A DNA stretch of 54,047 bases from Girardia tigrina (taxonomy: Eukaryota), in the NCBI GenBank assembly GCA_001938485.1, contig MQRK01176777.1, positions 6,165 to 60,211 of the forward strand. Direction: 5' to 3'. The translations under genes and the position numbers were made by a program. The notes beneath the pieces were generated by a model. It did not search any database and was not told the DNA's origin. It was given only the letters and a program-made list of their open reading frames with translations. Positions 2,786 to 29,023 of the stretch are shown here, piece after piece. Each line of letters starts with the position of its first letter. Position 1 is the first letter of the stretch.

Positions 2786-4510
2786 ATGACTCAATCAGAG
2801 GCCAGTGTATATTTATCCCAAGTTATAAGTTTATTGGAAGCCAATAAACAGTCAACAGATAGTAGTTTATTTTATGAACTGATATTGAGAATCTCTAAGT
2901 CTTATTACGATTATTTCCACAAATTTATCTCTGAAATATGTCATGTGTTAATTAAGAGAAACATTTGTCAATTATTGTGCTATTATTTGAAAAATGTGAC
3001 TATTTCAAATTTTGAAAAAGATAAAATTGTGACCATTATTCAGAATATCTTAATTAATTTTTCCGATCACTCGGACGATTTNGCGAAATCTGTTTTATCG
3101 TCGGAGATCTTGCATTCTCTGATCGATGCCTTCTTCCTTGTTGATTCATCGGGAGACATCAGTGATCCCGAAACTAAGAAATTCCTCTACCGATCAGTTG
3201 TTATCATCAACAATATTGCTCGTAATCTCTGTCATAATATCAATTACAGAGTCCCGGGAATCATAAACGCTTTGGAGAGATATATTAAATTAAATTGTGA
3301 TGATGAATTAGGATTGATTTCTGTTCTGACGTTATCGTATCTGGTGGAAGAGTCACAGATCGGTACACTCGACGAAGGTTTAGGAATTATCAAGAATTTG
3401 ATAAAACATATTCGATATATAAATGATACGAATGAAAGATCAAATGGATTCACTCTAAAGGAATTGGTTCATGGATTGCGGTGCATCTCGTGCAATGACA
3501 ATATGAAGATTAGAATCGATGAAGAAGGAGGAATACCGATACTGATTGATATGATACGAAATAAGGAAGACGATGTTGTTGAATCGGCATTAGGGACGAT
3601 TGAGAATTTATGTTTTAATGAAAAAATTAAACAGAAATTAAAAAACGAATATTCGATTGAAGAAGTAATTAAACCTTTTGCAAATATTCATTGTGAAAAG
3701 ATTAGAAGAAACTGCAATGGTATTTTATGGAAAGTTCAAAATCGAGCTGAATCTTTTCACAAAACAGAGACTGAAAAGAAATGTTCGAACAAGAAATACT
3801 CTTTCGATGTTTTTCTGAGTTACGCTTGGGCGAATAAATCAAACATTCGCCAAATATATCAGAAGCTAAAGTCATATAAATTTCGAGTTTGGATCGATGA
3901 AGAACAAATGAAAGACTGTTCAATTGAATCCATGGCAAACGGAATTGAGAACTCGAGATTATTCATCTTGGCAAGCTCAAGTTCATACAGAAAAAGCGAG
4001 AATTGTCGACACGAGGCCGAATACGCATTTCAAATTAAGAAACCGATAATCCCGATCGTTGTGGAGCTGAAATATAAACCGAGCAGTTGGCTAGGGTTCA
4101 TTATGGGCACCAAGGTTTATTATGAATTCAGTGAACGAAGAGACACTGAAATAGAAATTATTAAATTACGAAAATCAATTCAGTTAAATTTAGAGAATGA
4201 TATATCGGAGGAAAAAGATGAGGTTAAAAGAGAAGCGAATATGAAAACTTATGAATATCATTATTCTGGTGAAAAATTGATTGAAAATTGGAGTACTAAG
4301 GACGTTTCCAAATGGCTTGAAGATTGCCAAATGGGATATTTAAAGACGCATTTAGCCGGTGTTGATGGCCGCTTATTGCAAATTATGATTGATATGAGAT
4401 TAAAATCCGCAGATTATTTCAATAAAAGTTTGAGAAACGAATTTGGAATGAAATTTCTGGATGTGATTAAGTTCCATAAAGCTCTTAATGATTTGAGTTT
4501 GCTCAACTAA
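2786..4510 (+). CDS. ARM-repeat / TIR (TIR_2-type) / C-terminal SAM-like protein, copy A
   Basis: Open frame 2735-4510. First in-frame ATG is 2786; a splice acceptor TTTCATTTAG near 2754 suggests an upstream exon, so the start is uncertain. ARM repeats (EEGGIPILIDMIRN...ESALGTIENLCFNE, NCNGILWKV); TIR from ~3800 (FDVFLSYAW, VWID, SENCRHEAEYA, KPIIPI); SAM-like end (WSTKDVSKWLEDCQM...VDGRLL...FGMK). One ambiguous N at 3082. Confidence 0.9.
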   Translation: MTQSEASVYLSQVISLLEANKQSTDSSLFYELILRISKSYYDYFHKFISEICHVLIKRNICQLLCYYLKNVTISNFEKDKIVTIIQNILINFSDHSDDXAKSVLSSEILHSLIDAFFLVDSSGDISDPETKKFLYRSVVIINNIARNLCHNINYRVPGIINALERYIKLNCDDELGLISVLTLSYLVEESQIGTLDEGLGIIKNLIKHIRYINDTNERSNGFTLKELVHGLRCISCNDNMKIRIDEEGGIPILIDMIRNKEDDVVESALGTIENLCFNEKIKQKLKNEYSIEEVIKPFANIHCEKIRRNCNGILWKVQNRAESFHKTETEKKCSNKKYSFDVFLSYAWANKSNIRQIYQKLKSYKFRVWIDEEQMKDCSIESMANGIENSRLFILASSSSYRKSENCRHEAEYAFQIKKPIIPIVVELKYKPSSWLGFIMGTKVYYEFSERRDTEIEIIKLRKSIQLNLENDISEEKDEVKREANMKTYEYHYSGEKLIENWSTKDVSKWLEDCQMGYLKTHLAGVDGRLLQIMIDMRLKSADYFNKSLRNEFGMKFLDVIKFHKALNDLSLLN

Positions 4511-4997
4511 TAATTTTTATTATGTAAAAAATATATTACCATATTTATTTTTTATACGACTTTTTTGTGTATTGTCGAAATATTTATAAATAACGTCTTA
4601 TTATTATCAGAACTTTAAATTAATTTCGCTATATAATATTCCGATTTAATTTATTCTATTTGGAAAGAGAGAAACGTTCACTAATTATATTTTTTTATTT
4701 TTATATAATATAAAAAATTAATGTGCACTATCAGGATCATTTGCCTTTCAGTTTTTGCTTATTTTTTATATGATAGCTTGTCATAAAAATATTGTCCTAC
4801 AAATTTTTAAGTGAAGATAATAAATAATCTGATATTCTTCAATTTATGTCATATTTTCAGTTTGATTTTCTTTTAATTTTTTTCTTTTGATTAAGAAGCT
4901 TGCTATGTTCATCGCTCATCTGAAGACTATAACCTCATAAATTTCAAATGATGATTTTTCTGTTTAACAAAAAGTTTCAATTTCGATATATATATAT

Positions 4998-6163
4998 TAG
5001 GGCCGTTAACGATTAAAAATTTTTTAATAGTTAACTTTCCATAAATTAACGATTAAATAAAAAGTTTTTCCAATACAGTTTATTAAGAAATTTCTTCTAC
5101 ACTTATTTCAATTGATATACAGAGAAAAGTCCGAAATGGAATAGGTGATTTTTCTTTACAAATTGTCAGACAGCCAGCTACGTAAACAAACAAGCATATT
5201 AACGGTGTTTGGTTCAAGTGATGAATGCATCTTGTTGACAATGTAACCAGCAGAACTAAATAATTGTTCACATGGAACTGAGGTTACTGGTATGCAAAGT
5301 ATAGTTTTTGCCAATAATGCCAATTTCGGATATCGATATTCATTAAGTTTCCACAATTCTAATACGTCAACTGATTCGGCGACTTCTTTCTCCATTTTAT
5401 ATCGCTGTATTTCATTCGAAGGACTTTCTATACACTCACCTGAGTTGGAATCATCCTCTATCAGCTTAAACAGTTTTTCATTCGGTTCGCATGTAGTTTC
5501 ATTAGCAAAATTTGGCCAGCATGAACATTATTCTTAACCCAACCATTACTTGTCCTTTTCTGTTCATTAAGCAACCAAGTTGCTTCTTTAGCATCATCTG
5601 ATAAACACTTCGAATGTTTATACCGTGGATCGAGTAATGTTGCAATCTTTAAAACTGCAATTTTTTTCATATTAAATACACGTTCGTTGAGATCATTAAC
5701 AGCCACTTCCTTGAATCTAGCTATATAATCTGGATCGTCATCAGTCACAATCATATGTTTTGTTAAAGATGATTAAAGCGGCAATACGCGACTACACACT
5801 ACATTTTTATCTCCACCAAGAAGTAGCGTAGCATGATGGAATATATCTAAAACTTTGAAGCATTTTGACATCTTTTCCCAATCAGAATCAGACAATCTTG
5901 GACATTTATAGTTTAAAAATGGACCTACAGTTTGAAAATAGACCATTAATGCATGTCTAGCCCGCCACAAACTCTGCAACATCTCAAAAAGACTATTCCG
6001 TCTTGTTGGAAGATCTTGCTGTAATCTAAATAATGGGGAATCAATACAGTTTTGCAATTCAATTGTGTTAATAGGACTATGCTTAAAATATCCTATTATT
6101 TTGCGACATTTTACGCATAATTCTTCGGTATCTGTAACTTGAAATCTATGCAATATACTCGAC
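4998..6163 (-). mobile_element. hAT transposon (ZBED1-like), frameshifted 3' half with one terminus
   Basis: Terminus TAGGGCCGTTAACG at 4998. ORFs 5156-5395 (hATC dimerisation: LWKLNEYRYPKLALLAKTILCIPVTSVPCEQLFSSAG), 5461-5754 (ATLLDPRYK) and 5773-6153 (LQQDLPTRRNS). Confidence 0.9.
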
Positions 6164-6165
6164 TA

Positions 6166-6535
6166 TTAGGTGTATAACTTAGTTTTGTGGAATTTCTAAG
6201 AGATGGTGTAACCTGTGTAATAAGCATTATTTTACAGTCGTACGTACAGATTTTTAAAGTGCTGAAATCGAGGCATTAAAATTAAGGAGGTCATTGACCT
6301 TAAATGCGTCATAAACATATTTTAATCACGTTTTAGCATGACAACTTTCATACCAACAAAACAGCATTTGCGGGAAGCACTACTGTTTTGCTTTAATCAA
6401 AAGAAAAAAGCTGCAGACAATTTTCGGCTTCTTGAAGAAACTTATGGTCAACATGCACCAACTCAACAGACTTGCGAGAACTGGTATAAACGTTTCAAAA
6501 GTGGAGATTTCGACGTAAGTGACAAAGAGCGTATG
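6166..6535 (+). mobile_element. mariner (Mos1-like) 5' fragment
   Basis: TA + TTAGGTGTATAAC terminus. ORF from 6338 has the mariner N-terminal HTH (HLREALLFCF...LLEETYGQHAPTQQTCENWYKRFKSGDFDVSDKER); homology stops at ~6532. Confidence 0.85.
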
Positions 6536-6555
6536 ACAAAAATATATTTTTTCGT

Positions 6556-6594
6556 GATAATATATTTTGAAGATTTTATCGGCATCTTCAGATC
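6556..6594 (-). ncRNA. Degenerate minimal hammerhead ribozyme of the Penelope 3' region
   Basis: Minus strand GAT-CTGAAGA-T-GCCGAT-AAA-ATCTTC-AAAA-TATAT-TATC. The CUGANGA box is intact; stem II and the GAAA box are mutated. It lies ~70 nt after the GIY-YIG stop, where PLE hammerheads are expected. Confidence 0.45.
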
Positions 6595-6661
6595 CCTGAT
6601 TTTTATCTTTATTATTGCTTATATATATGAAATTGGTGATTATGTAATCTATTGTGTAAAA

Positions 6662-6961
6662 TTAATTGAAAACTTTTAAAATATTGGTGGAGAGTGCAGT
6701 TTGAAAATTAATTTTAGGATCACGAGATTTTATTAACAAAGTTTCACACGACACTCCCTCCCAATAATTTTTAAAATGCTTGCACAGAATTTTGAAATTA
6801 TTTGTACTCAAATCACTCTTACAAGTTTTCCTATGTTCAGCAATATGACTTTTACTTCCTCTATAATAGTGTTCCTGGACTCCTTTGCTGAGATGGCGGA
6901 CAATCTCTCCAATGTATGTAACATAGTACCCATTTCACATATACTTGTAAATCACTTCCGA
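6662..6961 (-). mobile_element. Penelope-like element 3' fragment (GIY-YIG endonuclease), decayed
   Basis: Not in the ORF track. Minus strand reads SEVIYKYM*NGYYVTYIGEIVRHLSKGVQEH...SHIAEHRKTC...NNFKILCK...ETLLIKSRDPKINFQ...FN*, the PLE GIY-YIG signature (VIY..YIG..R...EH, AEH, FKIL, E.L.I...P.IN). Confidence 0.85.
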
Positions 6962-7239
6962 ATTTATTGCAAAACATATTTTTAACTTTAAATGCCAACA
7001 TGATTCTGTAGGGATTGATGAGGTGCGGTTTCGATGCAGCTAAATCCTCGAGTCGATACTACCGGACTTGTTAATGGAGTCCGTGTTTTTGATGCATTCG
7101 TCATCGTAAACATAGCAAAGTTTGGAATCTGAATTGCATTCCGAACAGCAGAGCAGTTAACATTTAAGCATTATAAAGAAAGAATAATTAAGTACGCTTT
7201 TGGTTCATTCTATTTGCATGTTTTCCATTTATAAAATCA

Positions 7240-7620
7240 CAGGCTCTCAGTGAGTTGCTGTTCAGGAGGAGAGTCAGCCTGTTCAAGCAAGTGGTGGATG
7301 AGGAAAGGATGAACGTGTCGGTCACACTCTTTCGCTCGGGGGAAAATAAAGCGGACGTATTGACTCAATTGACGAATTGGTGGTCCATGGCAAAAAGAAT
7401 AGCCACAGCAGCAACAGAGTTGCAGGAGCCGGTTGATGGTCTTAAAAAGTTCAATGAGATAAATCACTTCGGGGTTCGACGAACCCCTTTTTTAGCAATG
7501 AAGATTTTGGAAGCAAGAAGGTCTCGGAACAGCAAATCGAGGCGGTAAAAAAGGATTGCGAGCCATGTGCTTCAATCGACCCGTCGCCAGTGCGTTGGAG
7601 CGAGGGAGTGTTGCGATCCT
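7240..7620 (+). mobile_element. Ty3/gypsy pol fragment (RNase H end and integrase zinc finger)
   Basis: RSGENKADVLT (RNase H C-terminal motif), HFGVRRT, then frameshifted CEPCASIDPSPVRWSEGVL (HHCC integrase N-terminus). GC-richer than its flanks. Confidence 0.75.
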
Positions 7621-8039
7621 ATAAATGAGAAAATAAAGAGTGTATGGAATGTTGTCCTGAATGAAAAGTTAAAAAGAAAAATAAATAAATCAAATAAAAC
7701 AGACGTATAATCCCATTTTAACCTTCCCTTTGTTTGAGTAGGTTGCTCAGGGACGCGAGGCGGTTAATTAATCAATATGATTTCTTAAATATGTTTAAAG
7801 TTACTTACAAGTTCAATGAAAAACATTTAAATTTTTAAATAATTTTAATTTAATAACTCGTGAAATTTCAACGGATTCGTTTGCACCACATGTTGGTGGG
7901 TTTCATTCTTTGGGTAATAATTAAAGCTTTAAAAATAATAATTAGCAATTCCTTTTCACCACATGTTCGTGAATTTCATTTTTAAATAATAATAAATATA
8001 AATTGAAATTTTTAATTAAATAATATTTTTATTTTAATA

Positions 8040-8716
8040 CAGTGTAAGCTGCTTAATAGGACCACATTTGTCCCAAGCCCAACTGGTCCTATTAACCGAC
8101 TGGTCCCATTAATCGAAGTGGTGTTATTTTTTGACAAAGTGCACTTTTCGAGTTTCTACAAGACAGAAGTTGGTGGTGACGATTTCATAAGAGGGTGTGA
8201 GCTTGCTGCAGCTCTCGTCAGCAGCCAGTCTGCAACCCTCCCCATTGCGCTCTAGCAAGATTGATGTCGAGTTAGGCGACACACACACATGCGTACCTGG
8301 GATGGTAAGTGTATGGGGCTACCGCCACTAACACTTAATTTGCTTGCAGGACACTTTTCCTCTTGCTGTGCCCTGTGTGTGTGCTACAAATGTAGCAGGT
8401 GCTCTCTGCAGCTAAAGAGATAAGAACAAATACAGTAAATACAAATTCAGTCAAGACCTGCTTCTTTGTTACGCGTGTATGTGTATGTTGATTGGGGTGG
8501 GTGTATGACCTACGCTAAAAACACGTTTTTCATGACTTTCATATTGTTTGAAGGGTCAAACAGTTTCATGAGTGGTCCCATTAACCGACTTTTACTGGTC
8601 CTATTAAGCGGCTGCTTTAATATTCGAAACATAGGAAATGATTCGGTACCACAAAATTTGGTCCTATTAAGCGGCTGGTCCTATTAACCTGTGGTCCTAT
8701 TAAGCGGCTTTCACTG
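8040..8716. mobile_element. Non-autonomous pogo/Tigger-like MITE
   Basis: TIRs CAGTGTAAGCTGCTTAATAGGACCACA / TGTGGTCCTATTAAGCGGCTTTCACTG. TA on the left (right side reads TG). Multiple subterminal GGTCC(T/C)ATTAA repeats. Confidence 0.85.
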
Positions 8717-9124
8717 TGTATATATTTATATTATATACGAGATAAAATTGGGTATAAATACCCTTCAAAAATTTAAAAAGTTCTAGAAGCACAAACAGAA
8801 ATCTAATACAAGAAAAATAATAAAAATTCAAAATAATTTACAATTTTTATTCGGCTTCAATTGTTGTTTAAAAGGATTCCTGTACAATATTTTGAAGAGT
8901 ATATTTTGTGATTATCAAATATAAATTTCTATGATATTTGTTGTTGATCTCAATTGCAATAAATTTAACAGTATCAATTATTGAGCTGGGTTCGAACTAC
9001 GAACAAGCAACACAGCCTTCGATTAAAGTTGATTAAATTCAGAATTATATATTTTCTTTGAACAGAATTATTCAAACGACAATTCAATTAATTATACCCA
9101 GTATTAAACGTACTAAACCTCCAA

Positions 9125-10075
9125 CAGGAGTACTGGGAGTGAAGAGAACATGGCAGCGTCTGGCGATAGACGTTGCTCATGTCGGACAAAAAAATCCTCA
9201 CAATGGTCGATTGTGGACCAGTGTGGTTTGCAATATGACGCCAAATTGCATCAGAGAGCAAACCGGACATATGTGCCGCCATAAGCAGCGTATGGAACGA
9301 GTTTGGGCCACCAGAAGAAGTTCTGTTGGATAATTATAACACCTTCAGGGGATCGGGGGTTGCGGGACTCCTTGCTGAGGTCGGAATTGAGGCCCTATTT
9401 CGATGAGTAAACCGGTCAAGTGGCAATTTCATTGTGGAAGGCAACCACTGAACGATCAAGAGAATGGTCGCTCGGAGAGGCAGGGACGCCCAAGAAATAG
9501 TTGCTTGGTACAACGCGACCCCAAATGCAAATAGAGTAATTCCGGCGTCGACGGTGTTTGCACAAAAGAGAACATTACCATTGCCAAAAACTTTCAATCA
9601 AGCACAACCGGGATCGCAGCATAATCCATCACCAACAGAGCAGGCGGTTAGTGACGTGGTGTTCATAAAAGTGGCGCCAAAATTCAGTTGCATGTCGCAG
9701 TGGATGCGAGGATCAGTCACGGAGACGTAATAAGTACATCAAGTGGAGGTGGACGGGAGGCCGTATCACGTCATCCACGTGCGGTATGCACCGTCGGGAT
9801 CAGCTCGGTTTCGTTCAGATCACGAAGTGAGGGAAAACGTTGAAATGCAATCGGCGCATCGCGATGGCCTTCGGGTTGATGAATCAGAATCTGTACATGA
9901 ATCTGGACCAACCGGGGAGCCCGGTGAGGAGCGGCCTAGCAGAGTAATTCGCAGACCGGCCCGATTTGAAGACTTCGTGTGTGTGGGCGCAACAGTATGC
10001 GGCGGTGACAAAATTCCCCTTTGTTCAAGTGGAGTATGCTTATGTGCCTTGAGGGTACGGGGGAATGTGATATGA
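9125..10075 (+). mobile_element. Ty3/gypsy integrase core and C-terminus, polypurine tract and start of 3' LTR; frameshifted
   Basis: WQRLAIDVAHVG (D), PEEVLLDN (D), GNFIVEGNH*TIKRMVAR (E), WYNATP, RPSRVIRRPARFEDFV. PPT-like GGGGGAA directly precedes TG at 10066. Confidence 0.8.
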
Positions 10076-12187
10076 TTTTATATGGATTTATTAAATTATT
10101 AATAAATCCGTTTGTTCTAATTAATAGTTGCTGTAATGTTAGATTATTTTAAAATATATTTCTATTTAGGTATTCTTCATTGTTAGGAGCGTTGTTGAGT
10201 TCTTAAAATTTTTGAATTTACAATCTTATCAAATTAATAATTAAACAATTACATTCCGTAAAATATTGTTATAGATATGTTAAAATAAGATTTTCAGAAA
10301 TTTAATGTAAAAATTAATTAATGTAAGAAATAAAATAAATTTTACGGTAGGTTTATTAAAAGATTTATGCCAAGATTTATTATAAAGTAAAAAAAGTTAA
10401 TTCCAAATTTGATGAAAATATTTAATTGAAATAAAATCAAAAGAAATATATAGTTTAATATTTTATTTGTGAAATGAAAATAAACTAAACTATTTTTTGT
10501 AACTTTTATTTTACACGATTAAATCGAAGTAAATTAAAAATGTAATTATAATTTTCTTTTTTGGAAATTGTAATTGGAATCAAAATATAATTGTAAAACA
10601 ATTAAATCGACTTAAATGAAAATGTGATTTTAATTTTATTTTGGAAAACGTAATTATTAATGGAAATATAATTTTATTTTTTATGTAAAAAAGGGGTAAT
10701 TTAAAAGTTGTTAAATTAAACGAAATTTTGATTTTAAATTCTATTTTCAAAATATTATTTTATTAAATCCAAAGTAATTTTTTAAAACTATTATGAAAAC
10801 GAAATGAAAAATGCTATTGTATAAAATTGGGAAATTTAATCGAGAAACAGGTAAATTTAAATGTACAATAAAATTGAAATTTAATAAATCTTTGTGACAA
10901 AATTTTAATAAATTCACTTTATAATTTTTTATTAAAAAAAGTATATAATTTTAATTCGTAAGAAATACTATAACTATATTTATATTTATATCAATTCTTA
11001 TTTATAATGGTTTGTGTAAAAAGAAAGTGCAAAAGTACCTCGAAAATATTTGTTTAAAAAAAATCAAATTATGGGAGAAATAAAGTTTTGTGTTAATGAC
11101 AACGTCTTTTAATCAAGAACCCAATATTCAAAATGAAAGATCGATTACAATAATAAGTTGTTTATAATAACTTCTGTATTTCCGGATTTGATCAAAATTT
11201 GAAAATTAAATTATTAAGATCTTTTTGACACTACCTGATTCGATTTTTATTCATAAATGCCGAATATTAGTATGATTTTTGTATAACACATTTTTGAATA
11301 TAATTTTTATTATCCTGTATTTAGCTTCTACAAAAATTGACAGAAACGGGAATACTGTGATCCAGTAATTTATAATCTTATTCATGCTTACATTTTTTTA
11401 AATTCCTATTTTTTTCTTTATTTATTAAGTTGTTAAGAGACAGTTTGTTCAATTCTTAAGACACTTTTCTAAATTTAATATGATTACATAACTTTACTCC
11501 AAATAATCACGTTTGTCGAATTTGATTTTTTTGACATCAAACATAATGATCTTTGTATTAACTTTTATTTTTTTATTTATCTATTGTATGAGGCGATATT
11601 TTTTGGTCCACTACTATTCTAAAGATCATTAAAATACGGCTTAGTATCGACGCAGTCATGACAAGACTCACTCGTCATCCGATTTCTGGATTATAATTTT
11701 ATGAGTAGAAATACTTGTTATGTACAGGAAAAGTAAAATAGAAATAACTAATAAGAGATTGACCCTTGTCTGTTCAAAGTAGTTTTTTTAACAATTATCT
11801 TTATCTAATACATTTCATGGGCTATTATCCTTCTATCATACATGATAATCTCTCGTACATTGAGTAGTATGGAGTTTTACTGTGAAAAATTTTATCTTAT
11901 GACAATAAGAAAGATGTACCGTAATTAATTATCGCAACAATCTTGCGTTGAAGGTAAATTGTCTAGGAAATTATTTGAAAGAATAATTTTTCTCTTTTTT
12001 ATGACTTATTATTTGTTTAATAAATATAAATTTGAAAACTGAACTTCGATTATGAAAAATCTTAATATTATTTATATTTATTTAATAGAATGTCTCTAAA
12101 TTGGTCTAAATATACAAAAGAAATGTGTTACGTTTAACATTTCAAAATTATAATATGAAATAAAATCTATGTATGTTATATTTTCAG

Positions 12188-12864
12188 AGAAGTAAATCAA
12201 CTGGCTCCTCCTTCTAAAGGGATTGCTGAGAGTTGTGTATCTAAGTAATAACATTATTTTTTAATAACAATTATTATTAAAAATTAGTTAAAATTTAGTT
12301 TTTATTGTAATTTTATTTCCAAATAATCGAAAAAATGATAAATATAATCTGCATAGTCATTATGTATGTTATATTTTCAGAGGAGTGATACAACAGGATT
12401 CTTCTCAAAATCCAGTTGGTGGAACTGGTGAACCTAAGTAATTAAATTATTTTTTTAATAAGAATTATTATTAAAAAGTGGTTAAAATTCAATTTTTATT
12501 GTAATTTTATTTTCAAATAATCGAAAAAAAATGATAAATATAATTTCCATAGTAATTCGATAAAGGTTCTTCAACATTGTCAACAAAGGAGATTGTACAT
12601 AGACTAGATAACAATAATTTACTTCTCATAAAGAATAATTAAATTAATTATTAATCAGTTTTTCGGCTTATTTATTTAATTATCTTTATTAGTTTAATCA
12701 ATTATAAAAATATTTAAGTTTATTTGTAATAATTTTGTCAAAGTATCAAATTATAATAATTTGGAAATGATTCAATATTATTAATAAACTATTTTTTAAG
12801 CGAAAACAATTCAACCGAACCGAGTTTGCCATCAGAAGGCAGTCTTCAAGGGCCAACCAATTAA
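12188..12864 (+). CDS. 3' exons of an unidentified gene: 12188-12244, 12381-12437, 12801-12864
   Basis: Two 57-nt phase-2 exons, each bounded by TATTTTCAG and GTAAT, plus a terminal exon after TTTTTTAAG. They splice in one frame: EVNQLAPPSKGIAESCVSK-GVIQQDSSQNPVGGTGEPN-ENNSTEPSLPSEGSLQGPTN*. Upstream exons (11000-12130) were not resolved and the gene may be a pseudogene. Confidence 0.55.
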
Positions 12865-13212
12865 TGATTCCATCGTTGATTAGGAAGACAAATAATATAA
12901 TTTGATTGAATTAGTTGACAAATTAAAGTGTTATCTAAAAGTTATCCCAATGATTTTTCAAATAATACAATCAGCCTTTTATAATTTCCTACATTCTGTA
13001 CCTAAAAATGATAAAATAATAATTATGAAAAATAAGAAAATTAGAAAATATTAAAATTATCATTTTCTTATAAATTTTGTTATCAAAACCGAAACGAATT
13101 TCTTCTGAAAATTTCTAATAATTATATCTCTTAATGAATGAAGCTTGTGCTTCATATAATTATCATTCAAATTTTCTGAAAGAATTAATATATTTTCAAT
13201 ATATTCAATACA

Positions 13213-13810
13213 CAGTAGAACCTCTCTATCTCGAATCCTTTCCGTTACAAAACGTGTTCGAGAGAAGGAGTCGATGCTAAAATAATTGAAGAGTACACCC
13301 TAAAGAGAACGTTGTTGATATAATCGACCAAAATTATTAACTCAGTTCAGACAAAACATGTTATTTTATTAAAGTTGTTGTTGATAAGTAAAAAGTTATT
13401 ACGATTCATTGAAATATTATTTAAAAAATAAATAAAACAAAATACAATAATACAAAATACAATAATACAATTAAATATAATTAATGTTCTATTAAAAATA
13501 TTACTATGAACGAAACTCAAGATATTATTGTATGCAATCGGTAATTTTCGGCCGCTTCTGTTTGGTAATTACTTGCTGATAGCCAAGTTTTGTAATTTCG
13601 TTTGAATGTCAAACATCTGATCCACCAGAGCTGGAGCAATATTTAGAACAAAACAGCGAAAATCCTAAGCTCCGATAAGAGCTTCACTTAATGTAAGGGA
13701 AGGAGATACACATACTGGTTCATCATCGCCATCATTTTCTTCATATGTGTTTCCTTCAAATAGATCAGTAGCAATGATGCTGTTAAGTAAATGGTTCGTC
13801 GTTTGGCTGA
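13213..13810 (-). mobile_element. Tigger/pogo-like transposon 3' end remnant
   Basis: Terminus CAGTAGAACCTCTCTATCTCGAA at 13213. The minus-strand acidic tail EENDGDDEPVCVSPSLTLSEAL resembles Tigger C-termini. Confidence 0.55.
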
Positions 13811-15250: not shown

Positions 15251-15289
15251 TAATGCATTTAATTCATAGTTGCCGTTTTTTTCGAAAAG

Positions 15290-18483: not shown

Positions 18484-18636
18484 TGTCAAAATCAATGTTA
18501 TCTGCCTTTTTGAATCATGTCGCGGCAGAAGTGGTGAGAGAAACTAAAAGAAGCCACTGTTTTTCTGCTCTCGGGACAAGACGGAAAGTGGCCGGATCGG
18601 TACATATCTTGTCAAAGAGGTGCGTGGAAGTCCCAT
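18484..18636 (+). repeat. Inverted 153-bp copy of piggyBac segment 16603-16755
   Basis: Reverse complement of 16603-16755 with only a few substitutions; both ends are abrupt. Confidence 0.95.
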
Positions 18637-18922
18637 GCACATTTTGATTCTCTATCTGAATGTGCAATTAGAAATTTTATATATTGATTACTTTTCTCTA
18701 TAATTGGCATAATGTGCAAATTTACACAAAATGCACATCGATTTTAGATGCACAAGGAAGCAGAATATCAAAAAAAGTGCTGATGTACTTGAATAGTAAT
18801 CCATATATAGATTCCACATCAACTATTTCAAAAAGGTGTTGAAATATCGATATTTTCGAACATTTCTTAAATTCTCAAAAATCGTGCCTAGAGCTGTTTT
18901 TTCGTATATATATGAAACCCCT

Positions 18923-20071
18923 GTGATATATATGTATGTTGTTTACCATCAAACAATACCTCATGAATCGTTTAATGTATTTAGTGATCAATCACAAGTT
19001 CCATGGTTACCGTAAGTAAGATACATAGCACACTGATCACCTCTCCTTGCGATCGTGCTTCCTCGTTTCCTTGATCATTTTCATACCTTTGTCTCTTATC
19101 TGGGAAGACCATTTTAGTTAACTTTCCTTGGTTTAATCTAGTCTCTTCGTATTCGCTGTCTTCATTGCATTTATCAATTTCCGCAACTGGGTATTGACGA
19201 TTTTGGGGTCTATTATGGTATCCTGCATTATTTTTTTCTTCCAATCGCTGTTTCTACTGTACTGTTCTCTTTCCTTAAATCTATTCTTGTTGAGATAACA
19301 TTGAGTTCTATAATTGCCATTTCTGTTGCAATGAGTACACTTCACATTTGGGCAATCTCATCTTATGTGGCCTTCTTCTTGACATGCATAACATTTTACA
19401 GTTCTGTAATAATTGTTTTTCGGTTTGAATCCATTATTTTTTTGGTTCCTATTGTTGTGTTCGTAATATCTATGTGTGGTTCTTTCGTTGTGTACAGCTT
19501 TGCGTCTAGTTACGGCTTTCCAATTATCTTGTTTATTTACCCTCGTCTATGCTGCCACTGTTTCCTCACATTCCATTTTACGTAGTTCGTACATATTGAT
19601 AACTACTCTTTTTATATCTTTGGTTTCAGTTGTTCCTCTCAGTTTTAATTCTTTTTTGATTTCATAACTGTCAACCATATTTAAACAGGCAAGGTTGAGT
19701 AGTTCTTTTTTAGACAATTTTTCTTTTGTTAGTATATTCACAAGTTCTTCTGCTTTTTTGTATGTTTCTTCTGGGTTGGAGGATCCTCACCGTAAGTTTA
19801 CCAACTCCTTTACTGTATCCAGAATGGATTTTTCTTTAGTAAATGCAGCTTTCAATTTTTCTTTGTAATTTTTACAGCCCATCTCTGAATATTTTTTTAT
19901 TGCCGATGGTGTCATAAACACAGTCACCATCACTATTTTCCTCTCTTCTGCTATACCCATAATGTCGGAATAGCGTTCGAAATTATCAATGAAATCTTCC
20001 AAATCCGATTCTGATCCATTTAATTTTTCACAGTTCATAATGTTCGTTGTCACATGAGCCGTAGTCGCCAT
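18923..20071 (-). mobile_element. Ty3/gypsy-like gag pseudogene with PBS-like and PPT/LTR-like signals, no pol
   Basis: Broken frames 19787-20134 (EKLNGSESDLEDFIDNFERY...MVTVFMTPSA), 19547-19741 and 19133-19345 (decayed knuckle CTHCNRNGNYRTQC). TGGCGACTACGG (PBS-like) starts at 20070 on minus; AAGGAGAGG|TG...CA spans ~19046-18923. Confidence 0.7.
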
Positions 20072-20454
20072 TATATGTAAAAACGACATGCAAAAACTCC
20101 TATTATACTTAAAACATGCATAGACATTATACATACCACTTACACAATCACCAAAAGTACCTGAGCCTAGACATCACCTATCAAAGTACCTCGATACCGT
20201 AACCATGAGGCATAGCCTTTTAAGATTATATATAAAAACAATCTAAAACACCTTAGCAACCATCACTATTACCTTTAAAACTATGAAAAACACCTTAAAA
20301 AACACCTTAAAAATCATTGAAAACATGTAAAAACCACCAAAATTACAGAAAAAAAGTGCAAAAAAACAATACTACACTCATCTGAGACAATTACAGTGTT
20401 GAGGAGTTTAAAAGAGACATTCAGCTGGAGAACCTGTCAACAACGGATGCGAAG

Positions 20455-21230
20455 ATGGAGAAGATCTACAGACTCAAGAAGATCAGCAGGAGCGGAAACG
20501 AGAAGACACTAAGACTAGTGTTGCCCCGTTTAAAAGAGCACAGTTGCCCGATGGATGCCTGTTAGAAGCAGTATGCAGAGGTGAAGGAGCTAAACAGGCA
20601 TCTCAGAAGAGACCATGAAGGAGCAGATCCCATCCCGAGGAAACAGAGAGAAAAGAAAGCCCAGCCGCGACAGAAAAAAAGGAGTCTACAAATGCCTGCA
20701 GTGCCCCAAAGAATACAAAACTGCAGGTTTCCTGAAAATCCATATCCAGAAGAATCACAGAGAAGAGTCAGTACAACCAAACGCCCAGCAAGAAGATAAT
20801 TTGGTCATCGTGAGAGAGGAAGAGCCGACAACAATTCAATCCAACCCCCAGTTACCGGAAGCAACTATGGGCACGCCGAGGATCCAGACAGAAGACAACA
20901 CTACATACACTCGTGAAGAATCGCCGCACCGACAATACCGATTGCCAGCCAATTATACAAAAGCAAAAGGACATTTCCAGTGCCCATTCAGAGGATGTTA
21001 CGCGTCCACCGTAACCGCCAAAGGTATGTATGGCCATGGCACCAAATTCCATGGCTGGTCTTTTGCAACTGGAAAACCGATCGCTCGCTGGCAGAAGGAC
21101 ACTGACCCCGTAGGAGGCCTATCGGGGGGCCCTTAAGGACTTTAGTTTGGGTGGACCCTCTAAAGAGCCTTAGGCTCAATACCATTGAAAGAGATGGGAG
21201 GCCCACTACACTCATCTGCCTAGACTGCAC
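20455..21230 (+). pseudogene. Multi-C2H2 zinc-finger ORF, probably the N-terminus of a restriction-like-endonuclease non-LTR retrotransposon (R2/NeSL/CRE type), disrupted
   Basis: CPMDAC*KQYAEVKELNRHLRRDH; frameshift; CLQCPKEYKTAGFLKIHIQKNH; CPFRGCYASTVTAKGMYGHGTKFH; a possible fourth finger starting ICLDC is truncated at ~21230. No RT seen, so the family is inferred. Confidence 0.55.
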
Positions 21231-21320
21231 ATGTGCTAATCAATACTGCACATGTGCTAATCAATATTGAACATGTTCTAATCAATAATGCACATGTGTT
21301 AATCAATACTTCACATGTGT
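21226..21320. repeat. 21-bp tandem repeat x4.5 containing the palindrome GCACATGTGC
   Basis: TGCACATGTGCTAATCAATAC units start at 21226, 21247, 21268, 21289 and 21310. Confidence 0.95.
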
Positions 21321-22599
21321 AAGTGTGCAAAATCAATAAGTTCACAATTGTGCAAAGTGTACAATATTTATGTTTTTATATAATAAAGCTAAGCATAGGT
21401 CGAAGGTAGTAAGATATCGAAAATCTGTTTAAACAAATATATAGTAACTTATATATGAATAGTCACATTCAATATCAACATTTTTGAAAAAATCGATACG
21501 AAGTGCTTTTTCGAATATATGCACATTATGTGTGCAAATATTATATTATAGATATGTATTATATTATGATATTATACTATGTTATCAACCAATATCGTAT
21601 CAACCATTCAAAACATGACCATATCAAGGCGATATCGTCATGCATTCATCGTGTCAATGTATTGTATCCATCATGTCAACGTATTGCATCCATCATGTCA
21701 ACGTATTGAACTCATCGTATCAATACACAGCTGAACATGTAAAAAATACAGAAAATGCTTATTAATATATAAAGTACTAAAAGAACTACCTTATCAAACA
21801 TTACCATCATGCTATCATTCTTCAAATTTACCATATGAAACATCAAAAATACCTTATCAACCATATCATCAACCATCACATTTACCTTAACAATCATAAA
21901 AATCCCCATATCAACTATCCAATATACCTTATCAAACATACCATCAACCATCAAAATTTACCACGGGTTTATTTGAAAAACCTGCCGTCACTGCAATTTC
22001 GGAGAGTCATCTGTTTACACAGGTATCTACTGGGCGGTTTCGTTTTCTCTAATGTATCTCGTTTCATTTCAGACAAGTCATACGGTCTGTGAATCATTGC
22101 ATCGGGACTTCTACGTGGACTTATAAGTAATTAATTTTGGTAATGAATTATAATTCTATCTTTCCTTTATTAGTTGATTTAAGGGTCATACGGCTTCTAG
22201 CGGTGGTAACTTGGGACGGAGTGTAGTCTAATTACGACGTACTCCACTACTATGCCTTGTTCGGCTTCTCAGAATTTCGGGTGAGCTCTTGTGGCTTTTC
22301 AGAGCTCTGGCTTATTACTTTTTCATTATGCAGCTCACAACCATCTTCGGAGGGTCTCTTCATTCTCAGGTACAGGAACTCATGCTTATTGGCTCTTTCC
22401 CGCTGTTCGCCGTTCTACATGTACATGGAATTCACTTAAACGTAACGGTAATAGTCGAGTTAGATCATTTCCCACTTCACTATAACGGTTTCATGCATGT
22501 GGGATGGTGTCGATATCAGGAAGGGTTAATGTCATTTGTATCGTAACACGCGTCTCTAAATATTGGAGGAAAGTAGATACGGGTAATTATTAACTTGAC

Positions 22600-22900
22600 C
22601 TGTAACGGTGGCACGCCACCGAGAGCTGGGTTTTTATAGAGGGGGCCACTACTTCTGTCGACCGGGATTGAAGATACTCGATGGTCCGCCGATGCTACCA
22701 AAATGATGGTTCATTTGGGCGCCGATTGTTGGGATTTAATCAAGTGATTAATTAATCTAGCGCGGCCGTCGAGCGTAGACGCGCGGCCTCCGTATTCGGC
22801 CAATCGGAACTGTGCGAACGCCACAATTTGATATCGATCAATCGAGTGGCAGAAATCGACCGACAATAAATCGACAACGGTCGGCGGTGGCTTGTTGTTG
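22600..22900 (-). promoter_or_regulatory. CpG-rich putative Pol II promoter (TATA plus CCAAT-like boxes)
   Basis: Minus-strand TATAAAAA at 22638-22631 in a GC-rich context; GGCCAATCGG at 22798; GCGCGGCC twice. Only a decayed reading frame follows. Confidence 0.35.
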
Positions 22901-24708
22901 ACGATTTGTGTTAAATAATGACGATAGCGCTTCACCTTTTTTCTGGTTAGAAGGTCAAATAAAGGACATACAAAAAAAATCAACTTATTCGAAATATCAC
23001 AAAAATTTATTGATTAGTAAAACAATTGCTATTTCAGTGATATTTATTATTTACATTTATTTTTTATATAGATAAGTAAGATATGTGATTTTTGATGTAA
23101 ATAATATTAGTATTTTTATGATAATAAAGATTCTTTTAGTTATTAGATTTGTTATTTAATTAAAAGTGGTTACTACATAAATAAATAAAGATTCAAATTT
23201 ATCGTTGAGTTAATTTTTTATGTAACAGAAATTTTCCAAGGAACAAGAAAGAAGTTACGTTCTTCTAAAAGGTGGCATAGAATACAATCACATGGAGGAA
23301 ATGTCACTACTGTTGGTACACAACTGTGACAAACACGAGATGCTAACGAAAAAAAATCAAAAAAATGTTTAAGATTATGAGTTAGGATTACATCAATGAG
23401 CTATATTATATTTGGTGCGATAAATTGTGCGTTATCGACGAAGAAAAGAATCTTACAGTTGATGAAGCGCATCTTCGCATTCAGCTATGTGAGCTATTTA
23501 GAGAACAGTGTTTGTCATTCACGTTTTCTTATTAGATCGCCAGAATTAATAATAGTAGTTATTCTTAGGTAAAGGGTTTAGCTTAGGGTAAATATTTGTT
23601 TTAATATTATTTGATAAAAAATTTCATTAATAAATTTCCACATGTTTTATTTGATTTTACGATACTATTATGACAGAGTTACATGTCTCTGTTTGATAGC
23701 ATTCTCAATGAATGTAATATTTTATGTAGATAAGGGATTTTCTATTGTGTGTTCTCGAGAAAACGGTCCGAGATGCAGGATGAAGAGGTTTTCGAGATAG
23801 GGAAGTGTAAATCATAGTTCGTATCTGCATTTTTGTCTCTTTGTCCGTGATTTATTCGTATTTTGCAATCGATTTTTCTTCAACTTCCCATGATTTGATT
23901 GAGCTGAAATTTTACTCAAATGTGAAATTCATCTGACAATAAATGTATAAATGAAAAAATTACTATATTAATGATAAATGAATAATGTCTCAATTTGATC
24001 GTTTTATTTTTTCTGCTCCGTCTCTGTATGTTAGGTATTGCTAAAACCGAAATCGAGATATTTATATTATTTTATTATATGTATGTGTAAGTCTGCAATA
24101 ACACGTTTTTGTCTGCAGTTGCAGCAATGTTGCAATTAATCAATTCCCGATCGCTAAATTGTTGAAATGGATTTTTTTATTTTCCTTTATTTAATATTTT
24201 ATTCTTAAAGGAATAAGTGAATAAATGTCTATATACAACTTGTTTTCAAAAATCTAATAAATATTATTGACTTTCAGTCGCCAGACACTATTACTTAATC
24301 AATATTTTGTCAAAACTGTAAGAATAATATTTTTGCATCAGAAAATCAATTATAAATTTGGATATCCTAGAAAATATCACAACAGTATATTAAAAAATAA
24401 TTTTTATTTTATTAATTCATTAATATTTTTGAGCTCTCTTACTACTTTCTAAAAGTATGAATACGAATGAATGGAATAGATTGAAATCATACGCCAATAA
24501 AGTGTTAGAATATATAAGGTTACGCCTCGTATTTAAAAATTTTTGTTTGAGAGTAGCGACATCAATTAATTTGAACTTATTTATTGTTTCGGTTGTGTTC
24601 GTTTTTCATTATCCTTGTCATTTTACAGTTTTATTTAGAGTCGCAAATTTCTGACGACTTAAATTGTTCAAATTATTGCTTTCTGAGATTTTATCAAAAT
24701 TTAATATA

Positions 24709-25985
24709 CAAGGTGAGTCAGAAGTCACCGGCAGTCAAAACGACACAGGTTTTAAAAATTCAATTTATTATTACATTAAAATTGTGTACAGAATAGCAAG
24801 CACTTCATCATAAATCCATCACTAATTTCTCTGCAAGAATTCATTATCATTGCCACAAATTGATCTATTGCTCCCGGCTTTTTGGCATACACTAATTCTT
24901 TAACACACCCCAAAGAAAGAAATCAGGAGGAGGAAGTTCTGGAGAGCGAGGAGGATACTCGATGGAACCGCGGCGACCAATCCATCTTTTTGGAAAGTTG
25001 TCGTTGAGCCAGTTTCGCGCTATAATGCTGTAATGGTGAGGTGCACCATCTTGTTGAAACCACATCTCCCAAAGCGGCCAGTTCTTCACAGAGGATATAA
25101 AATTATTGTTAAGCATTGACACGTAACTATCACCTGTCATAGAACCTTCAAAGAAAAATGGCCATACCAGACCGGAAGCAGTGATTCCAATCCAAACTGC
25201 GAGACCAACTGCGTTGACTTCTTTTTGTAGGATTTCATGCGGATTTTCATGGATCCAGTAAACAGAATTGTGACGATTGACCTGTCCGTTAGGCTTGAAG
25301 GTTGCCTCATCACTCCAAATAATCTTCTCCGGAAATGTAGCATCTTCATGACAAAGTTGTTGAAAAATCTGAGAGAATTCAACTCGACGGTCATAATCAT
25401 TTTCATTCCAGGAGTGGAGTAAATGTGGAGAGTAAGGTTTTAAATGAGCATCGTACAGGAGCCTGAAAATGGAAGTTTGAGAAATGCTAAGCTCTTGTAA
25501 TGCTCGTCTGGTGGATTTTCGAGGACTATTCGTAAAACTATATGTAATAATTTGTCTGTTTTTCAGAGTTGCAAACAGATTTAGATCTACCACATCTAGG
25601 AAGATCTTCACAGGAACCAGTTATTTCAAAGCGGTAAATTAGATTCGCTATTGTGTCTCTTTTAACCGCCCTACTAATTTTTTCTTGGAATCGTTTACAT
25701 GTTTCACTTTTATTGTCCGTTTTATAAAATGTTTTTATGAGAAGTACGCGTTCTTCAGTTATTAGTTTGGCATTATTTGACTCTGCCATTTTTAAGGTTT
25801 GTTAAATGATGAAATTATCGACTATAAATATGAAATTATCGACTTAAATAGACTATTTGTAAGATGTGTTCACATGATCTTCTTAGTGAGTTTACAAGAA
25901 ATCAATCGACTGATCGATGTATACTCATTTTTATACACTTGGATCACTAATATTATGACTGCCCGGTGACTTCTGACTCACCCTG
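24709..25985 (-). mobile_element. Tc1/mariner DD41D (rosa/Visitor-type) transposon, both TIRs present, frameshifted
   Basis: TA-CAAGGTGAGTCAGAAGTCACCGG...CCGGTGACTTCTGACTCACCCTG-TA. N-terminal HTH (25538-25789), WSDEATF, and QQDGAPHH with 41 residues to the D of PPRSPELPPPDFFLWG. Confidence 0.93.
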
Positions 25986-27234
25986 TATTACGTCCAAAAC
26001 ATGTTTATTTAGTCAATTTTCTTATGTTTTCATATTATACCACATGATTGATACTTAATGGTAAATATTATGAATGATAAACGCAACAGATGTTTACATA
26101 CTCGTTTTTTCCTCCAAAACAGTAAATTTTATGAATCATAATTTGCATCATTAACTTGTTTAGAGTAAATTAGAAACAGGACGTAATTTTTAAAACAGAT
26201 AATACAGGCTTATACTTAAAAAGTAAGTATTACTAGTAAGTTACTGAGATCATAATGAAATGGATATCAATTTATTAGAAAGATTAAAATCTCAAAACCA
26301 ACACAAAGGACTATGCTTATTAATTATACAATATGCTTCTTAAATCTCAAATAAGTAGATTCAAACATTTAGACATGCTCAAATATTAATCAATATTAGA
26401 CGAGAAATGCTCTTATGAATCTGCAATCCTCATTTTTATTGATTTCTGCCAACGTATTACTAATACGATATTAGACATTTACTTATTCAGAATTTTTTAG
26501 AGAAGTACAGCTAAATACTAGTAGTTCCATTCTTGCATTGAGTTATTGGTTACTTATTTCATTATTATTTTTATTTTACTAGCATTAAAATCAATAATTA
26601 TTTTTTTTTAATATTACCATTAATGATTGGTGGAAATAATATCTTCGTTATTTTGTTTATTTTTTAAACGCAGAAGTAAAGCTTAGTATAAACCCTTCTT
26701 TACAAACATTTCTGTCTTTTGATTAAAACTAGGGTTCATAGCTTTTCCATTGATTCCTTTAAATGCATAACATTTGTATTTTTAATTTTCTTGTCTCCAG
26801 AATTTCGACCATCGATACATAATTATTACGCATACATCATTCACCAAAAGTTCTTCTTAATAAGTCGAAAAAAAATGAAGGTACACATATCCCTCGTTTT
26901 ACACGGCACATTTTAAAACTTTTTTACATGTAAAGAATAATATTGAAAATCAACGAAAATAATTTTACGTTTAATGTCTAAAATATTTCTTACAAGAAAA
27001 TAGATGTTTAGATATATTATTTCGTACAAATCGAGGCTCATGTGCATAATCTATCTAAAAATTAAAAACTGTCCTTAAGATATTTTAACAGAATATTTTC
27101 ATCCCACAAACCAAACCATGGCTATTATCCTTTAATGATAAATTTAACCGCTTTCAGACAATAATTATTCGGAATAATTTATTGAACTCTGTAAATAACA
27201 TTTGTGAGATCATTATCGAACATTGATATCTAAA

Positions 27235-29023
27235 TTAATTTAACAAAGCCAGATTGTTTAGAGCATCATGAAATTTAACAACATCCAGAAATTTCATTCC
27301 AAATTCGTTTCTCAAACTTTTATTGAAATAATCTGTGGATTTTAATCTCATATCAATCATAATTTGCAGTAAGCGGCCATCAACACCGGCTAAATGCGTC
27401 TTTAAATATCCCATTTGGCAATCTTCAAGCCATTTGGAAACGTCTATAGCACTCCATTTATTAATAGTATTCATATCACTCTCTTTATTCTCTTCTTTTT
27501 GAATCTCATCTTCTTCCGATATATCATTTTCTAAATGTAACTGAATTGATTTTCGTAATTTAATAATTTCTATTTCAGTGTCTCTTCGTTCACTGAATTC
27601 ATAGTAAACCTTGGTGCCCATAATGAACCCTAGCCAACTGCTCGGTTTATATTTCAGCTCTACAACGATCGGGATTATCGGTTTCTTGATCTTTAGTGCG
27701 TATTCGGCCTCGAGTCGACAATTCTCGCTTTTTCTGTATGAACTTGAGCTTGCCAAGATGAATAATCTCGAGTTCTCGATTCCGTTTGCCATTGCTTCGA
27801 TTGATGAATCTTTCATTTGTTCTTCATCGATCCAAACTCGAAATTTATACGACTTTAACTTCTGATATATTTGACGAATGTTTGATTTATTCGCCCAAGC
27901 GTAACTCAGAAAAACATCGAAAGAGTATTTCTTGTTCGAACATTTCTTTTCAGTCTCTGTTTTGTGAAATGATTCAGCTCGATTTTGAACTTTCCATAAA
28001 ATACCATTGCAGTTTCTTCTAATCTTTTCACAATGAATATTTGCAAAAGGTTTAATTACTTCTTCAATCGAATATTCGTCTTTTAATTTCTGTTTAATTT
28101 TTTCATTAAAACATAAATTCTCAATCGTCCCTAAGGCCGATTCAACAACATCGTCTTCCTTATTTCGTATCATATCAATCAGTATCGGTATTCCTCCTTC
28201 TTCATCGATTCTAATCTTCATATTGTCATTACACGAGATGCACCGCAATCCATGAACCAATTCCTTTAGAGTGAATCCATTTGATCTTTCATTCATATCA
28301 TTTATATATCGAATATGTTTTATCAAATTCTTGATAATTCCTAAACCTTCGTCGAGTGTACCGATCTGTGACTCTTCCACCAGATACGATAACGTCAGAA
28401 CAGAAATCAATCCTAATTCATCATCACAATTTAATTTAATATATCTCTCCAAAGCGTTTATGATTCCCGGGACTCTGTAATTGATATTATGACAGAGATT
28501 ACGAGCAATATTATTGATGATAACTACTGATCGGTAGAGGAATTTCTTAGTTTCGGGATCACTGATGTCTCCCGATGAATCAACAAGGAAGAAGGCATCG
28601 ATCAGAGAATGCAAGATCTCCGACGATAAAACAGATTTCGCGAAATCGTCCGAGTGATCGGACAAATTAATCACGATCGTTTGAATCAATCTGACCGTTT
28701 CATCCGTAACTAACTCTTTCCTATTGACATTCATTAGATAAATAGTATTCAGTCTCGAGCACAATTCTCTCTCGATACAAGTCTCGCAAATTGCGTCGAT
28801 GAATGTATCATAGAAATCGTAATACCAATCTTTAATCGTCGTCAAAATTCTCTGTGATTTGTCGGTATTTCTGTGAGCAAGAGAGTCGTCTAAGGCATTT
28901 AGTAATCGATTGATATAATCAACGAACTCGTGTCGTTCGTAGTGACACAATTCGTATTGATTAAAGATCGATCTGAAAGAAAATGAAAATACGATTGAAA
29001 TAAAGTTGTTATTCTTACTCCAT
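27235..29023 (-). CDS. ARM-repeat / TIR / SAM-like protein, copy B (exons 29023-29019, 28972-27235)
   Basis: Same domains as copy A (SENCRLEAEYA in TIR). Probable true start is ATGGA|gtaaga...tttcag|ATCG with a 46-nt intron (29018-28973), giving MESIFNQYEL... Confidence 0.9.

What the first reader, a model, noticed from the sequence alone, without database searches (positions are those of the whole stretch)
2786..29023. Inverted pair of ARM-TIR-SAM genes with homogenised cores and divergent N-terminal caps
Seen: 3053-4209 aligns without indels to 28671-27515, and 4301-4464 to 27444-27281, at roughly 97% nucleotide identity by eye. The first ~90-100 aa are only distantly homologous (YYDYFHKFISEIC vs YYDFYDTFIDAIC), and the TIR-SAM linker and last residues also diverge. 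Boundaries are sharp. The copy B cap is CpG-rich like the shared core while the copy A cap is AT-rich. Inference: an old duplication whose signalling core is homogenised by gene conversion (possibly B to A) while caps stay distinct, i.e. a modular innate-immune or damage-sensing receptor family with variable sensor ends.
Basis: partly seen in the sequence, partly recalled or inferred. Interest (0 to 1): 0.8.

Follow-up and report, generated by a model that had tools for sequence, protein, structure and literature searches.

The report
Gene-converted ARM-TIR-SAM paralogue pair
Two old copies of an uncharacterised invertebrate immune-type gene, facing each other 23 kb apart, keep their signalling parts almost identical by copying DNA from each other while their front ends have drifted far apart, as vertebrate TLR1 and TLR6 do, and a rotifer cluster of the same family shows the same pattern.

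Summary
Observation confirmed. Tract 1 is 97.6% identical (28 differences, the N left out) and tract 2 98.8%, both without indels. Caps are 27% identical as protein. Synonymous divergence is 0.03 in the ARM core but near saturation in cap and tail, and the flanks are unrelated. Purifying selection or one recent duplication cannot give this; repeated interlocus gene conversion between old paralogues can. Core differences are mostly synonymous (p about 1e-8), and an assembler could not have created the shared tracts. ARM, TIR and SAM are all supported. The family is widespread (molluscs, an annelid, rotifers, a jellyfish), uncharacterised, and not SARM1. New here: two unconverted islands sit in the TIR BB-loop/alphaB and beside the putative catalytic Glu. 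A tandem cluster of this family in Rotaria magnacalcarata has the same identical core with different ends in three assemblies, plus one chimeric copy. The process is known; the family is new ground for it.

The parts
2709..2754 (+). Putative 46-nt intron before the main exon of copy A (GT...AG; probably in the 5' UTR, since no in-frame ATG lies just upstream)
   Evidence: Same length and phase as in copy B; the same acceptor position and phase in relatives L001 and L002. Inferred, no transcript.
2755..4510 (+). Copy A main coding exon (first in-frame ATG at 2786, stop 4508-4510): ARM-TIR-SAM
2756..3052 (+). Copy A unconverted N-terminal ARM repeats ('cap'); conservative, CpG-poor
3053..4209 (+). 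Shared tract 1 in A (ARM core plus TIR), 97.6% identical to B 27515-28671; starts at the conserved N-x-S-D motif
3082..3082 (.). The only N in the window; left unfilled and left out of all counts
3809..4144 (+). TIR domain of A (Pfam TIR_2); putative catalytic Glu codon at 4013-4015; BB-loop Gly replaced by Asp at 3914-3916
3916..3946 (+). Divergence island 1 (BB loop/alphaB; B 27778-27808): 7 differences, 2 amino-acid changes
4011..4036 (+). Divergence island 2 (alphaC around the Glu; B 27688-27713): 3 amino-acid changes
4210..4300 (+). A TIR-SAM linker, partly diverged (about 69% nt) with indels
4301..4464 (+). Shared tract 2 in A (SAM core), 98.8% identical to B 27281-27444
4465..4510 (+). 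A diverged tail (last SAM helix), pS 0.82 against B
4511..27234 (.). 22.7-kb spacer between the convergent genes, mostly transposon remnants (hAT, mariner and others); no third paralogue
27235..28972 (-). Copy B main coding exon (578 full codons plus stop): ARM-TIR-SAM
27281..27444 (-). Shared tract 2 in B (SAM core)
27515..28671 (-). Shared tract 1 in B (ARM core plus TIR; putative catalytic Glu codon at 27709-27711)
28672..28972 (-). Copy B unconverted N-terminal ARM repeats; fast-evolving, CpG-rich
28973..29018 (-). Putative 46-nt intron of copy B (GTAAG...TTTCAG)
   Evidence: inferred
29019..29023 (-). Putative first coding exon of B (ATG plus two bases); the ATG frame is closed by a stop unless the intron is spliced
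   Evidence: inferred

Best explanation
Two old paralogues of the invertebrate ARM-TIR-SAM family lie tail to tail 23 kb apart and have repeatedly exchanged sequence by interlocus gene conversion. Tracts start where homology is high enough (the left edge is the first conserved family motif) and have different ages, giving layers: ARM core pS 0.03, SAM 0.07, TIR 0.18 with two old islands, linker 0.33, cap and tail near saturation. The direction cannot be fixed and is probably both ways. Shown: the layered divergence, the domain content, the kept Glu, B's faster cap. Inferred, by analogy with SARM1 and plant TIRs: the proteins are cytosolic, ARM-regulated TIR signalling proteins; SAM clustering lets the TIRs assemble and cleave NAD+ or scaffold a signal; near-identical cores let A and B share partners or co-assemble; B's first ARM repeats took on a new binding specificity; the TIR islands persist because converting them is selected against. 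My odds: conversion about 0.88; NADase-type immune or stress signalling about 0.5; selection keeping the islands about 0.4; cap as ligand sensor about 0.3.
For: Synonymous sites are homogenised as well (four-fold sites identical at 72/75 in the ARM core; pS 0.033 against 0.71 and 0.82). The flanks are unrelated. 21 of 31 differences in the ARM, TIR and SAM cores are synonymous, p about 1e-8. Islands are clustered (p about 0.001) with synonymous divergence far above the rest of the core (Fisher p 4e-7), the 'peak of divergence' signature reviewed in PMC3924837. The islands map to the BB loop/alphaB and alphaC, surfaces used for TIR assembly and catalysis (PMC8635717). The Glu aligns with the matching Glu of Cat1 and RPS4 TIRs. 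Independent repeat in R. magnacalcarata: tandem paralogues are 99-100% identical over about 1 kb of ARM-end plus TIR and about 60-90% outside it, in three assemblies, and tract ends differ between isolates. Precedent: TLR1/TLR6 (PMC2077338).
Against: No orthologues from a sister species, no population data and no reads, so the formal test (paralogues closer than orthologues in the core only) was not run for this pair. The only N in 54 kb falls inside the repeat, so some variants may be assigned to the wrong copy. No function is known for any family member. The residue four before the Glu is Asn across the family, not the Trp of SARM1 and plant TIRs, and both copies have lost the family's BB-loop Gly; enzyme activity is therefore uncertain. 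The islands rest on 20 codons. The Rotaria contigs are short and their identical cores could be partly assembly consensus.
Confidence: 0.8

Rival explanations
1. Neutral homogenisation. Conversion runs wherever homology allows; the cap, linker, tail and islands simply fell below the homology threshold or were missed by chance, with no functional split between A and B. This differs from the best explanation only in its functional part.
For: The left boundary coincides with the first conserved family motif. A's cap is hardly more variable than the ARM core in unconverted comparisons (34% vs 40%, L001/L002). The linker is indel-rich and disordered (pLDDT below 50).
Against: Thirty-nt islands with near-saturated synonymous sites survive inside a 1.1-kb tract at pS about 0.03-0.09, at functional TIR surfaces. 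B's cap is accelerated (Tajima p 0.014 with L002, 0.052 with L001).
Confidence: 0.4
2. Mosaic origin through other paralogues. A single recent replacement of one gene's core by the other's, or a recent duplication followed by import of the cap, islands and tail from family members elsewhere in the genome.
For: B's cap differs in composition from everything else that is unique to B. The cap tree does not reject A grouping with L001 and L002 instead of B (AU p 0.165). A related sample holds at least three paralogues.
Against: Five different divergence levels along the gene need several events. The best cap tree joins A and B (85/87). There is no third copy in the window and no duplicated flank.
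Confidence: 0.15
3. Assembly artefact: a collapsed repeat or mis-joined haplotypes.
For: The only N of the window lies 29 nt inside tract 1. Allelic SNPs would also be mostly synonymous.
Against: Joining a cap to a foreign core in frame at four homologous junctions needs long shared k-mers, which exist only if the tracts were already near-identical. There are 30 substitutions, no indels, and the longest identical run is 217 nt. Cap, tail and flanks are far too diverged for alleles. An artefact could misplace variants but could not create the pattern.
Confidence: 0.05
4. No recombination: purifying selection on the core and positive selection on the cap after one duplication.
For: dN/dS is about 0.15 in the ARM core, and B's cap is fast.
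Against: Selection on protein cannot hold synonymous sites at 3% divergence next to a saturated cap and tail. Between other paralogues the ARM core is only 26-42% conserved.
Confidence: 0.01

Closest known systems
TLR1/TLR6 partial gene conversion (PMC2077338; PMC3125219)
   Same: Neighbouring TIR-domain paralogues whose C-terminal repeats and most of the TIR are homogenised by conversion while the N-terminal repeats diverge; recurs in separate lineages.
   Different: Here the proteins are cytosolic ARM-repeat proteins with a SAM, with no LRR or membrane span; the genes are inverted; no ligand or partner is known; the orthologue test was not possible.
Invertebrate ARM-TIR class (counted in oyster, PMC4346834, and Aplysia, PMC9334734)
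   Same: Armadillo fold plus TIR, multi-copy, function unknown. Full-length homologues in Mytilus, Lottia, Solemya, Nucella, Brachionus and Rhopilema, partial ones in Owenia and bdelloids.
   Different: The passages read do not mention a C-terminal SAM or concerted evolution. The window pair belongs to a fast-evolving, lineage-specific clade with three proteins from run SRR33002330.
SARM1 / TIR-1
   Same: Same three domain types. SARM1 is the top Foldseek hit for the whole model (E 4e-7, but TM only 0.27) and for the SAM (TM 0.68, E 0.03). A Glu sits at the catalytic position.
   Different: The order is ARM-TIR-SAM with one SAM, not ARM-SAM-SAM-TIR. The TIR profile is closer to Cat1 and RPS4 than to SARM1. 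Asn replaces the Trp four residues before the Glu. Multi-copy and fast-evolving.
Peaks of divergence under conversion (opsins, PMC3924837; copepod GOT1, PMC3728101)
   Same: Short islands of old divergence inside homogenised paralogues.
   Different: In the opsins the selected sites are known; here selection is only inferred.

Membership tests
Invertebrate ARM-TIR class | Armadillo-type fold N-terminal to the TIR | tested here: met
   Pfam Arm above cut-off; helical solenoid model with armadillo fold matches
Invertebrate ARM-TIR class | TIR domain | tested here: met
   TIR_2 E 3e-20 and 5e-21
Invertebrate ARM-TIR class | Homology over most of its length to spiralian or cnidarian ARM-TIR proteins | tested here: met
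   Lottia 95% cover E 2e-38, Mytilus E 3e-42; shared motifs
SARM1 orthologues | Domain order ARM-SAM-SAM-TIR with two tandem SAMs | tested here: not met
   One SAM, after the TIR
SARM1 orthologues | SARM1-type TIR sequence | tested here: not met
   Profile scores SARM1 TIR at E about 7e-4, like MyD88 and below Cat1 and RPS4; Asn in place of Trp
SARM1 orthologues | NMN/NAD+ allosteric pocket in the ARM domain; octameric ring | not testable with these tools
   Monomer model only, no ligand work
Enzymatic (NADase) TIRs | Glu in alphaC at the catalytic position | tested here: met
   A residue 420 / B residue 421 aligns with the Glu of Cat1 and RPS4; present throughout the animal members
Enzymatic (NADase) TIRs | Canonical pocket and BB-loop residues | tested here: inconclusive
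   Trp replaced by Asn across the family; BB-loop Gly replaced by Asp in both window copies only
Enzymatic (NADase) TIRs | Oligomerisation-dependent NAD+ cleavage | not testable with these tools
   Needs biochemistry
SAM domain | SAM fold | tested here: met
   pLDDT 88.9, TM about 0.68 to SAM domains; profile hits. Single-sequence Pfam is negative.
Partial concerted evolution by interlocus gene conversion | Sharp regional drop in synonymous divergence between paralogues | tested here: met
   pS 0.033 against 0.71 and 0.82
Partial concerted evolution by interlocus gene conversion | Paralogues closer than orthologues in the tract only | tested here: inconclusive
   No orthologues for the window pair. 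In Rotaria the two R. magnacalcarata paralogues group together to the exclusion of the R. socialis protein on ARM-end plus TIR.
Partial concerted evolution by interlocus gene conversion | Polymorphism shared between copies | not testable with these tools
   One sequence only. Seen in Rotaria assemblies, with an assembly caveat.

The most novel reading that the evidence does not exclude
The ARM-TIR-SAM proteins of invertebrates form an unrecognised family of SARM1-like NAD+-cleaving receptors, built from the same domains in a different order. Their homogenised core acts as a recombination platform: crossovers in it (an inversion of the 23-kb spacer here, unequal crossover in rotifer clusters) recombine different N-terminal sensor repeats with different TIR variants and SAM tails, giving combinatorial receptor diversity.
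Probability: 0.2. Interest if true: 0.8.

Novelty: new variant of a known kind. Interest (0 to 1): 0.48.

Why it matters
TIR domains of non-model animals include whole clades with no characterised member (PMC13142454). Conversion has done a natural domain-swap experiment in this pair: two proteins about 97% identical over roughly 440 residues differ mainly in the first ARM repeats and in five residues around the TIR BB loop and the putative catalytic Glu. That points to the likely specificity and activity determinants and makes the family easy to test. The same pattern in bdelloid rotifers suggests a family-level habit rather than a one-off. It also warns that trees and assemblies of these genes will be unreliable.

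Tried and rejected
Organism: not identified. A CutA search gave one unnamed hit, exact look-ups were negative, and the run accession of the closest relatives is in no paper searched. The window is an AT-rich animal genome with short introns and is not human. Direction of conversion from CpG: rejected as unreliable. Single-sequence Pfam found no SAM; this was settled by profile and fold. The word searches found no relative above 45% identity, but they scored only 8000 candidates of similar length, so this is not evidence of absence. No third copy in the window. Rfam found nothing. Literature searches found no report of gene conversion in ARM-TIR genes or in bdelloid TIR genes; the library is limited to open papers. 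The spliced models were searched by main exon only; the joined model was left out.
Full report
Observation. The window (30% GC, short introns, many transposon remnants; an unidentified invertebrate, not human) holds two convergent, nearly single-exon genes: A on the + strand (main exon 2755-4510) and B on the - strand (28972-27235), 22.7 kb apart. A 3053-4209 matches B 28671-27515 without indels, with 28 differences in 1156 bases. The one N, at 3082, was left unfilled and left out. A 4301-4464 matches B 27444-27281 with 2 differences in 164. Similarity stops at the coding region: blastn finds nothing else between the loci, and the flanks score like shuffles. Both genes have a 46-nt GT-AG stretch ending at the same place and phase just before the main exon; relatives L001 and L002 have the same acceptor. 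B needs this intron to use the ATG at 29023. I searched the main exons by reference and left the joined model out.

Domains. Pfam finds TIR_2 and Arm. The AlphaFold model of B (pLDDT 78) is one continuous helical solenoid from about residue 5 to 330, then a TIR, a disordered linker and a small helical domain. The 'cap' is therefore the first ARM-like repeats, and the conversion boundary falls inside a helix at the conserved N-x-S-D motif. The last domain is a SAM by profile search and by fold (TM about 0.68 to SARM1, Shank and Scm SAMs). The TIR keeps a Glu at the catalytic position. It has Asn for the Trp four residues upstream, as the whole family does, and both copies have Asp for a BB-loop Gly that every other member keeps. 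Homologues of the same kind occur in molluscs, an annelid, rotifers and a jellyfish; the closest (36-45%) are three unnamed proteins from one sequencing run.

Divergence is layered. Synonymous differences per site are 0.033 in the ARM core, 0.065 in the SAM core, 0.18 in the TIR, 0.33 in the linker, 0.71 in the cap and 0.82 in the tail. Selection on protein cannot do this, and the ARM core is only 26-42% conserved among other paralogues. One recent duplication would have left matching flanks and caps. Repeated conversion between old paralogues explains all of it. Of 31 codon differences in the cores 21 are synonymous (p about 1e-8), and the longest identical run is 217 nt. An assembler needs long shared words to join a cap to a foreign core in frame, and these exist only inside the tracts. 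An artefact could therefore misplace variants but could not create the pattern. The N inside tract 1 remains a reason to check reads.

Twelve of the 28 differences in tract 1 sit in two stretches of about 30 nt (3916-3946 and 4011-4036; p about 0.001). Their synonymous divergence is like that of the cap (0.71 and 0.55), and they carry five amino-acid changes. They map to the BB loop/alphaB and to alphaC beside the Glu, surfaces used for TIR assembly and catalysis (PMC8635717). Such peaks are the expected sign of selection against conversion (PMC3924837), but chance gaps or a third donor are not excluded.

Direction and caps. The CpG contrast is real: cap A has 1 CpG in 297 nt (p 3e-5 against the core rate) and cap B has 21 in 300. 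But B's unshared linker and tail are CpG-poor too, and L001 shows a steep GC gradient within one gene, so direction cannot be read from composition. A's cap is ordinary for the clade (31-34% to L001 and L002, which are 34% to each other); B's is 19%. The cap tree joins A and B (85/87; alternatives not rejected), with B's branch three times longer (Tajima p 0.014 and 0.052). The derived, fast part is B's cap, through either new function or relaxed constraint.

A second case. Among the homologues, Rotaria magnacalcarata has three tandem family genes. Two of them are 99-100% identical over about 1 kb (last ARM repeats plus TIR) and mostly 60-90% before it and 65-83% after it, in three assemblies. 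The third shares a 281-383 nt identical tract whose end differs between isolates. One assembly has a single chimeric gene with the 5' end of one copy and the 3' end of the other. These short contigs could include collapse artefacts. Unlike in the window pair, the SAM there is not homogenised. The rotifer genes are distant from the window clade, so the pattern arose twice.

How it most likely works. Shown: conversion-type layering, domain content, the kept Glu, the faster B cap. Inferred by analogy with SARM1 (PMC8635717): the ARM solenoid restrains the TIR or binds a ligand, the SAM clusters the protein, and clustered TIRs cleave NAD+ or scaffold a signal. Matching cores would let A and B share partners or co-assemble, as proposed for TLR1 and TLR6 (PMC2077338). 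Because the genes are inverted, a crossover in the core would flip the spacer and swap the 3' ends; this is a prediction, not an observation.

Comparison and verdict. The proteins belong to the catalogued but uncharacterised invertebrate ARM-TIR class (PMC4346834, PMC9334734) and fail membership of SARM1 on domain order and TIR type. The evolutionary process is well known from TLR1/TLR6 and opsins. I found no report of it in this family, nor of the C-terminal SAM, in the open papers searched. The finding is real, well supported as gene conversion, and useful as a handle on an unstudied TIR family, but it is not a new kind of system. Interest 0.48.

Noticed in passing
L005, L006, L007 (L007 3319-6118, 10001-12814, 14767-17561), L008, L009: Rotaria magnacalcarata tandem ARM-TIR-SAM cluster with about 1 kb of identical core between paralogues, isolate-specific tract ends, and a chimeric gene in L009 16680-19472.
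   Followed up: yes
Proteins P0027/P0028 and P0019/P0021: Other Rotaria pairs are about 100% identical up to the TIR and about 45% in the C-terminal part: swapped SAM tails or assembly chimeras.
   Followed up: no
window 3914-3916 and 27808-27810: The family-wide BB-loop Gly is Asp in both copies, with different codons; this could change TIR assembly.
   Followed up: partly
L001 87-1793: Steep GC3 gradient along one family gene (0.29 cap, 0.45 ARM, 0.84 TIR, 0.91 SAM); possibly GC-biased conversion of its 3' half.
   Followed up: no
window 35869-36195 (-): Intact CutA1 reading frame without introns (Pfam E 3e-37), GC-rich (48%) for this genome, next to AT-rich dispersed repeats.
   Followed up: partly
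window 39717 to about 50930 (-): Multi-exon protein kinase, resembling STK17/DRAK or DAPK by eye, with a 511-codon acidic last exon; introns of about 60 nt and one of about 9 kb.
   Followed up: partly
window 36621-38045: Tc1-like element with terminal inverted repeats of about 159 nt (91% identical) and a DDE frame interrupted by a (TA)n run; a mariner remnant lies next to it at 38374-39219.
   Followed up: no
window 31649-32383 and 42765-43826: Direct repeat of about 770 nt in two blocks, 91-96% identical; unclassified.
   Followed up: no
window 16603-16755 and 18484-18636; 17940-18324: Inverted 153-nt pair (97% identical) of a transposase-like fragment, enclosing a degenerate 21-nt repeat array.
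   Followed up: no
window 5159-6162 (-), 6326-6676 (+), 20594-21133 (+), 24892-25801 (-): hAT, Mos1-type, C2H2 zinc-finger and Tc1-like remnants in the spacer between the two genes.
   Followed up: no
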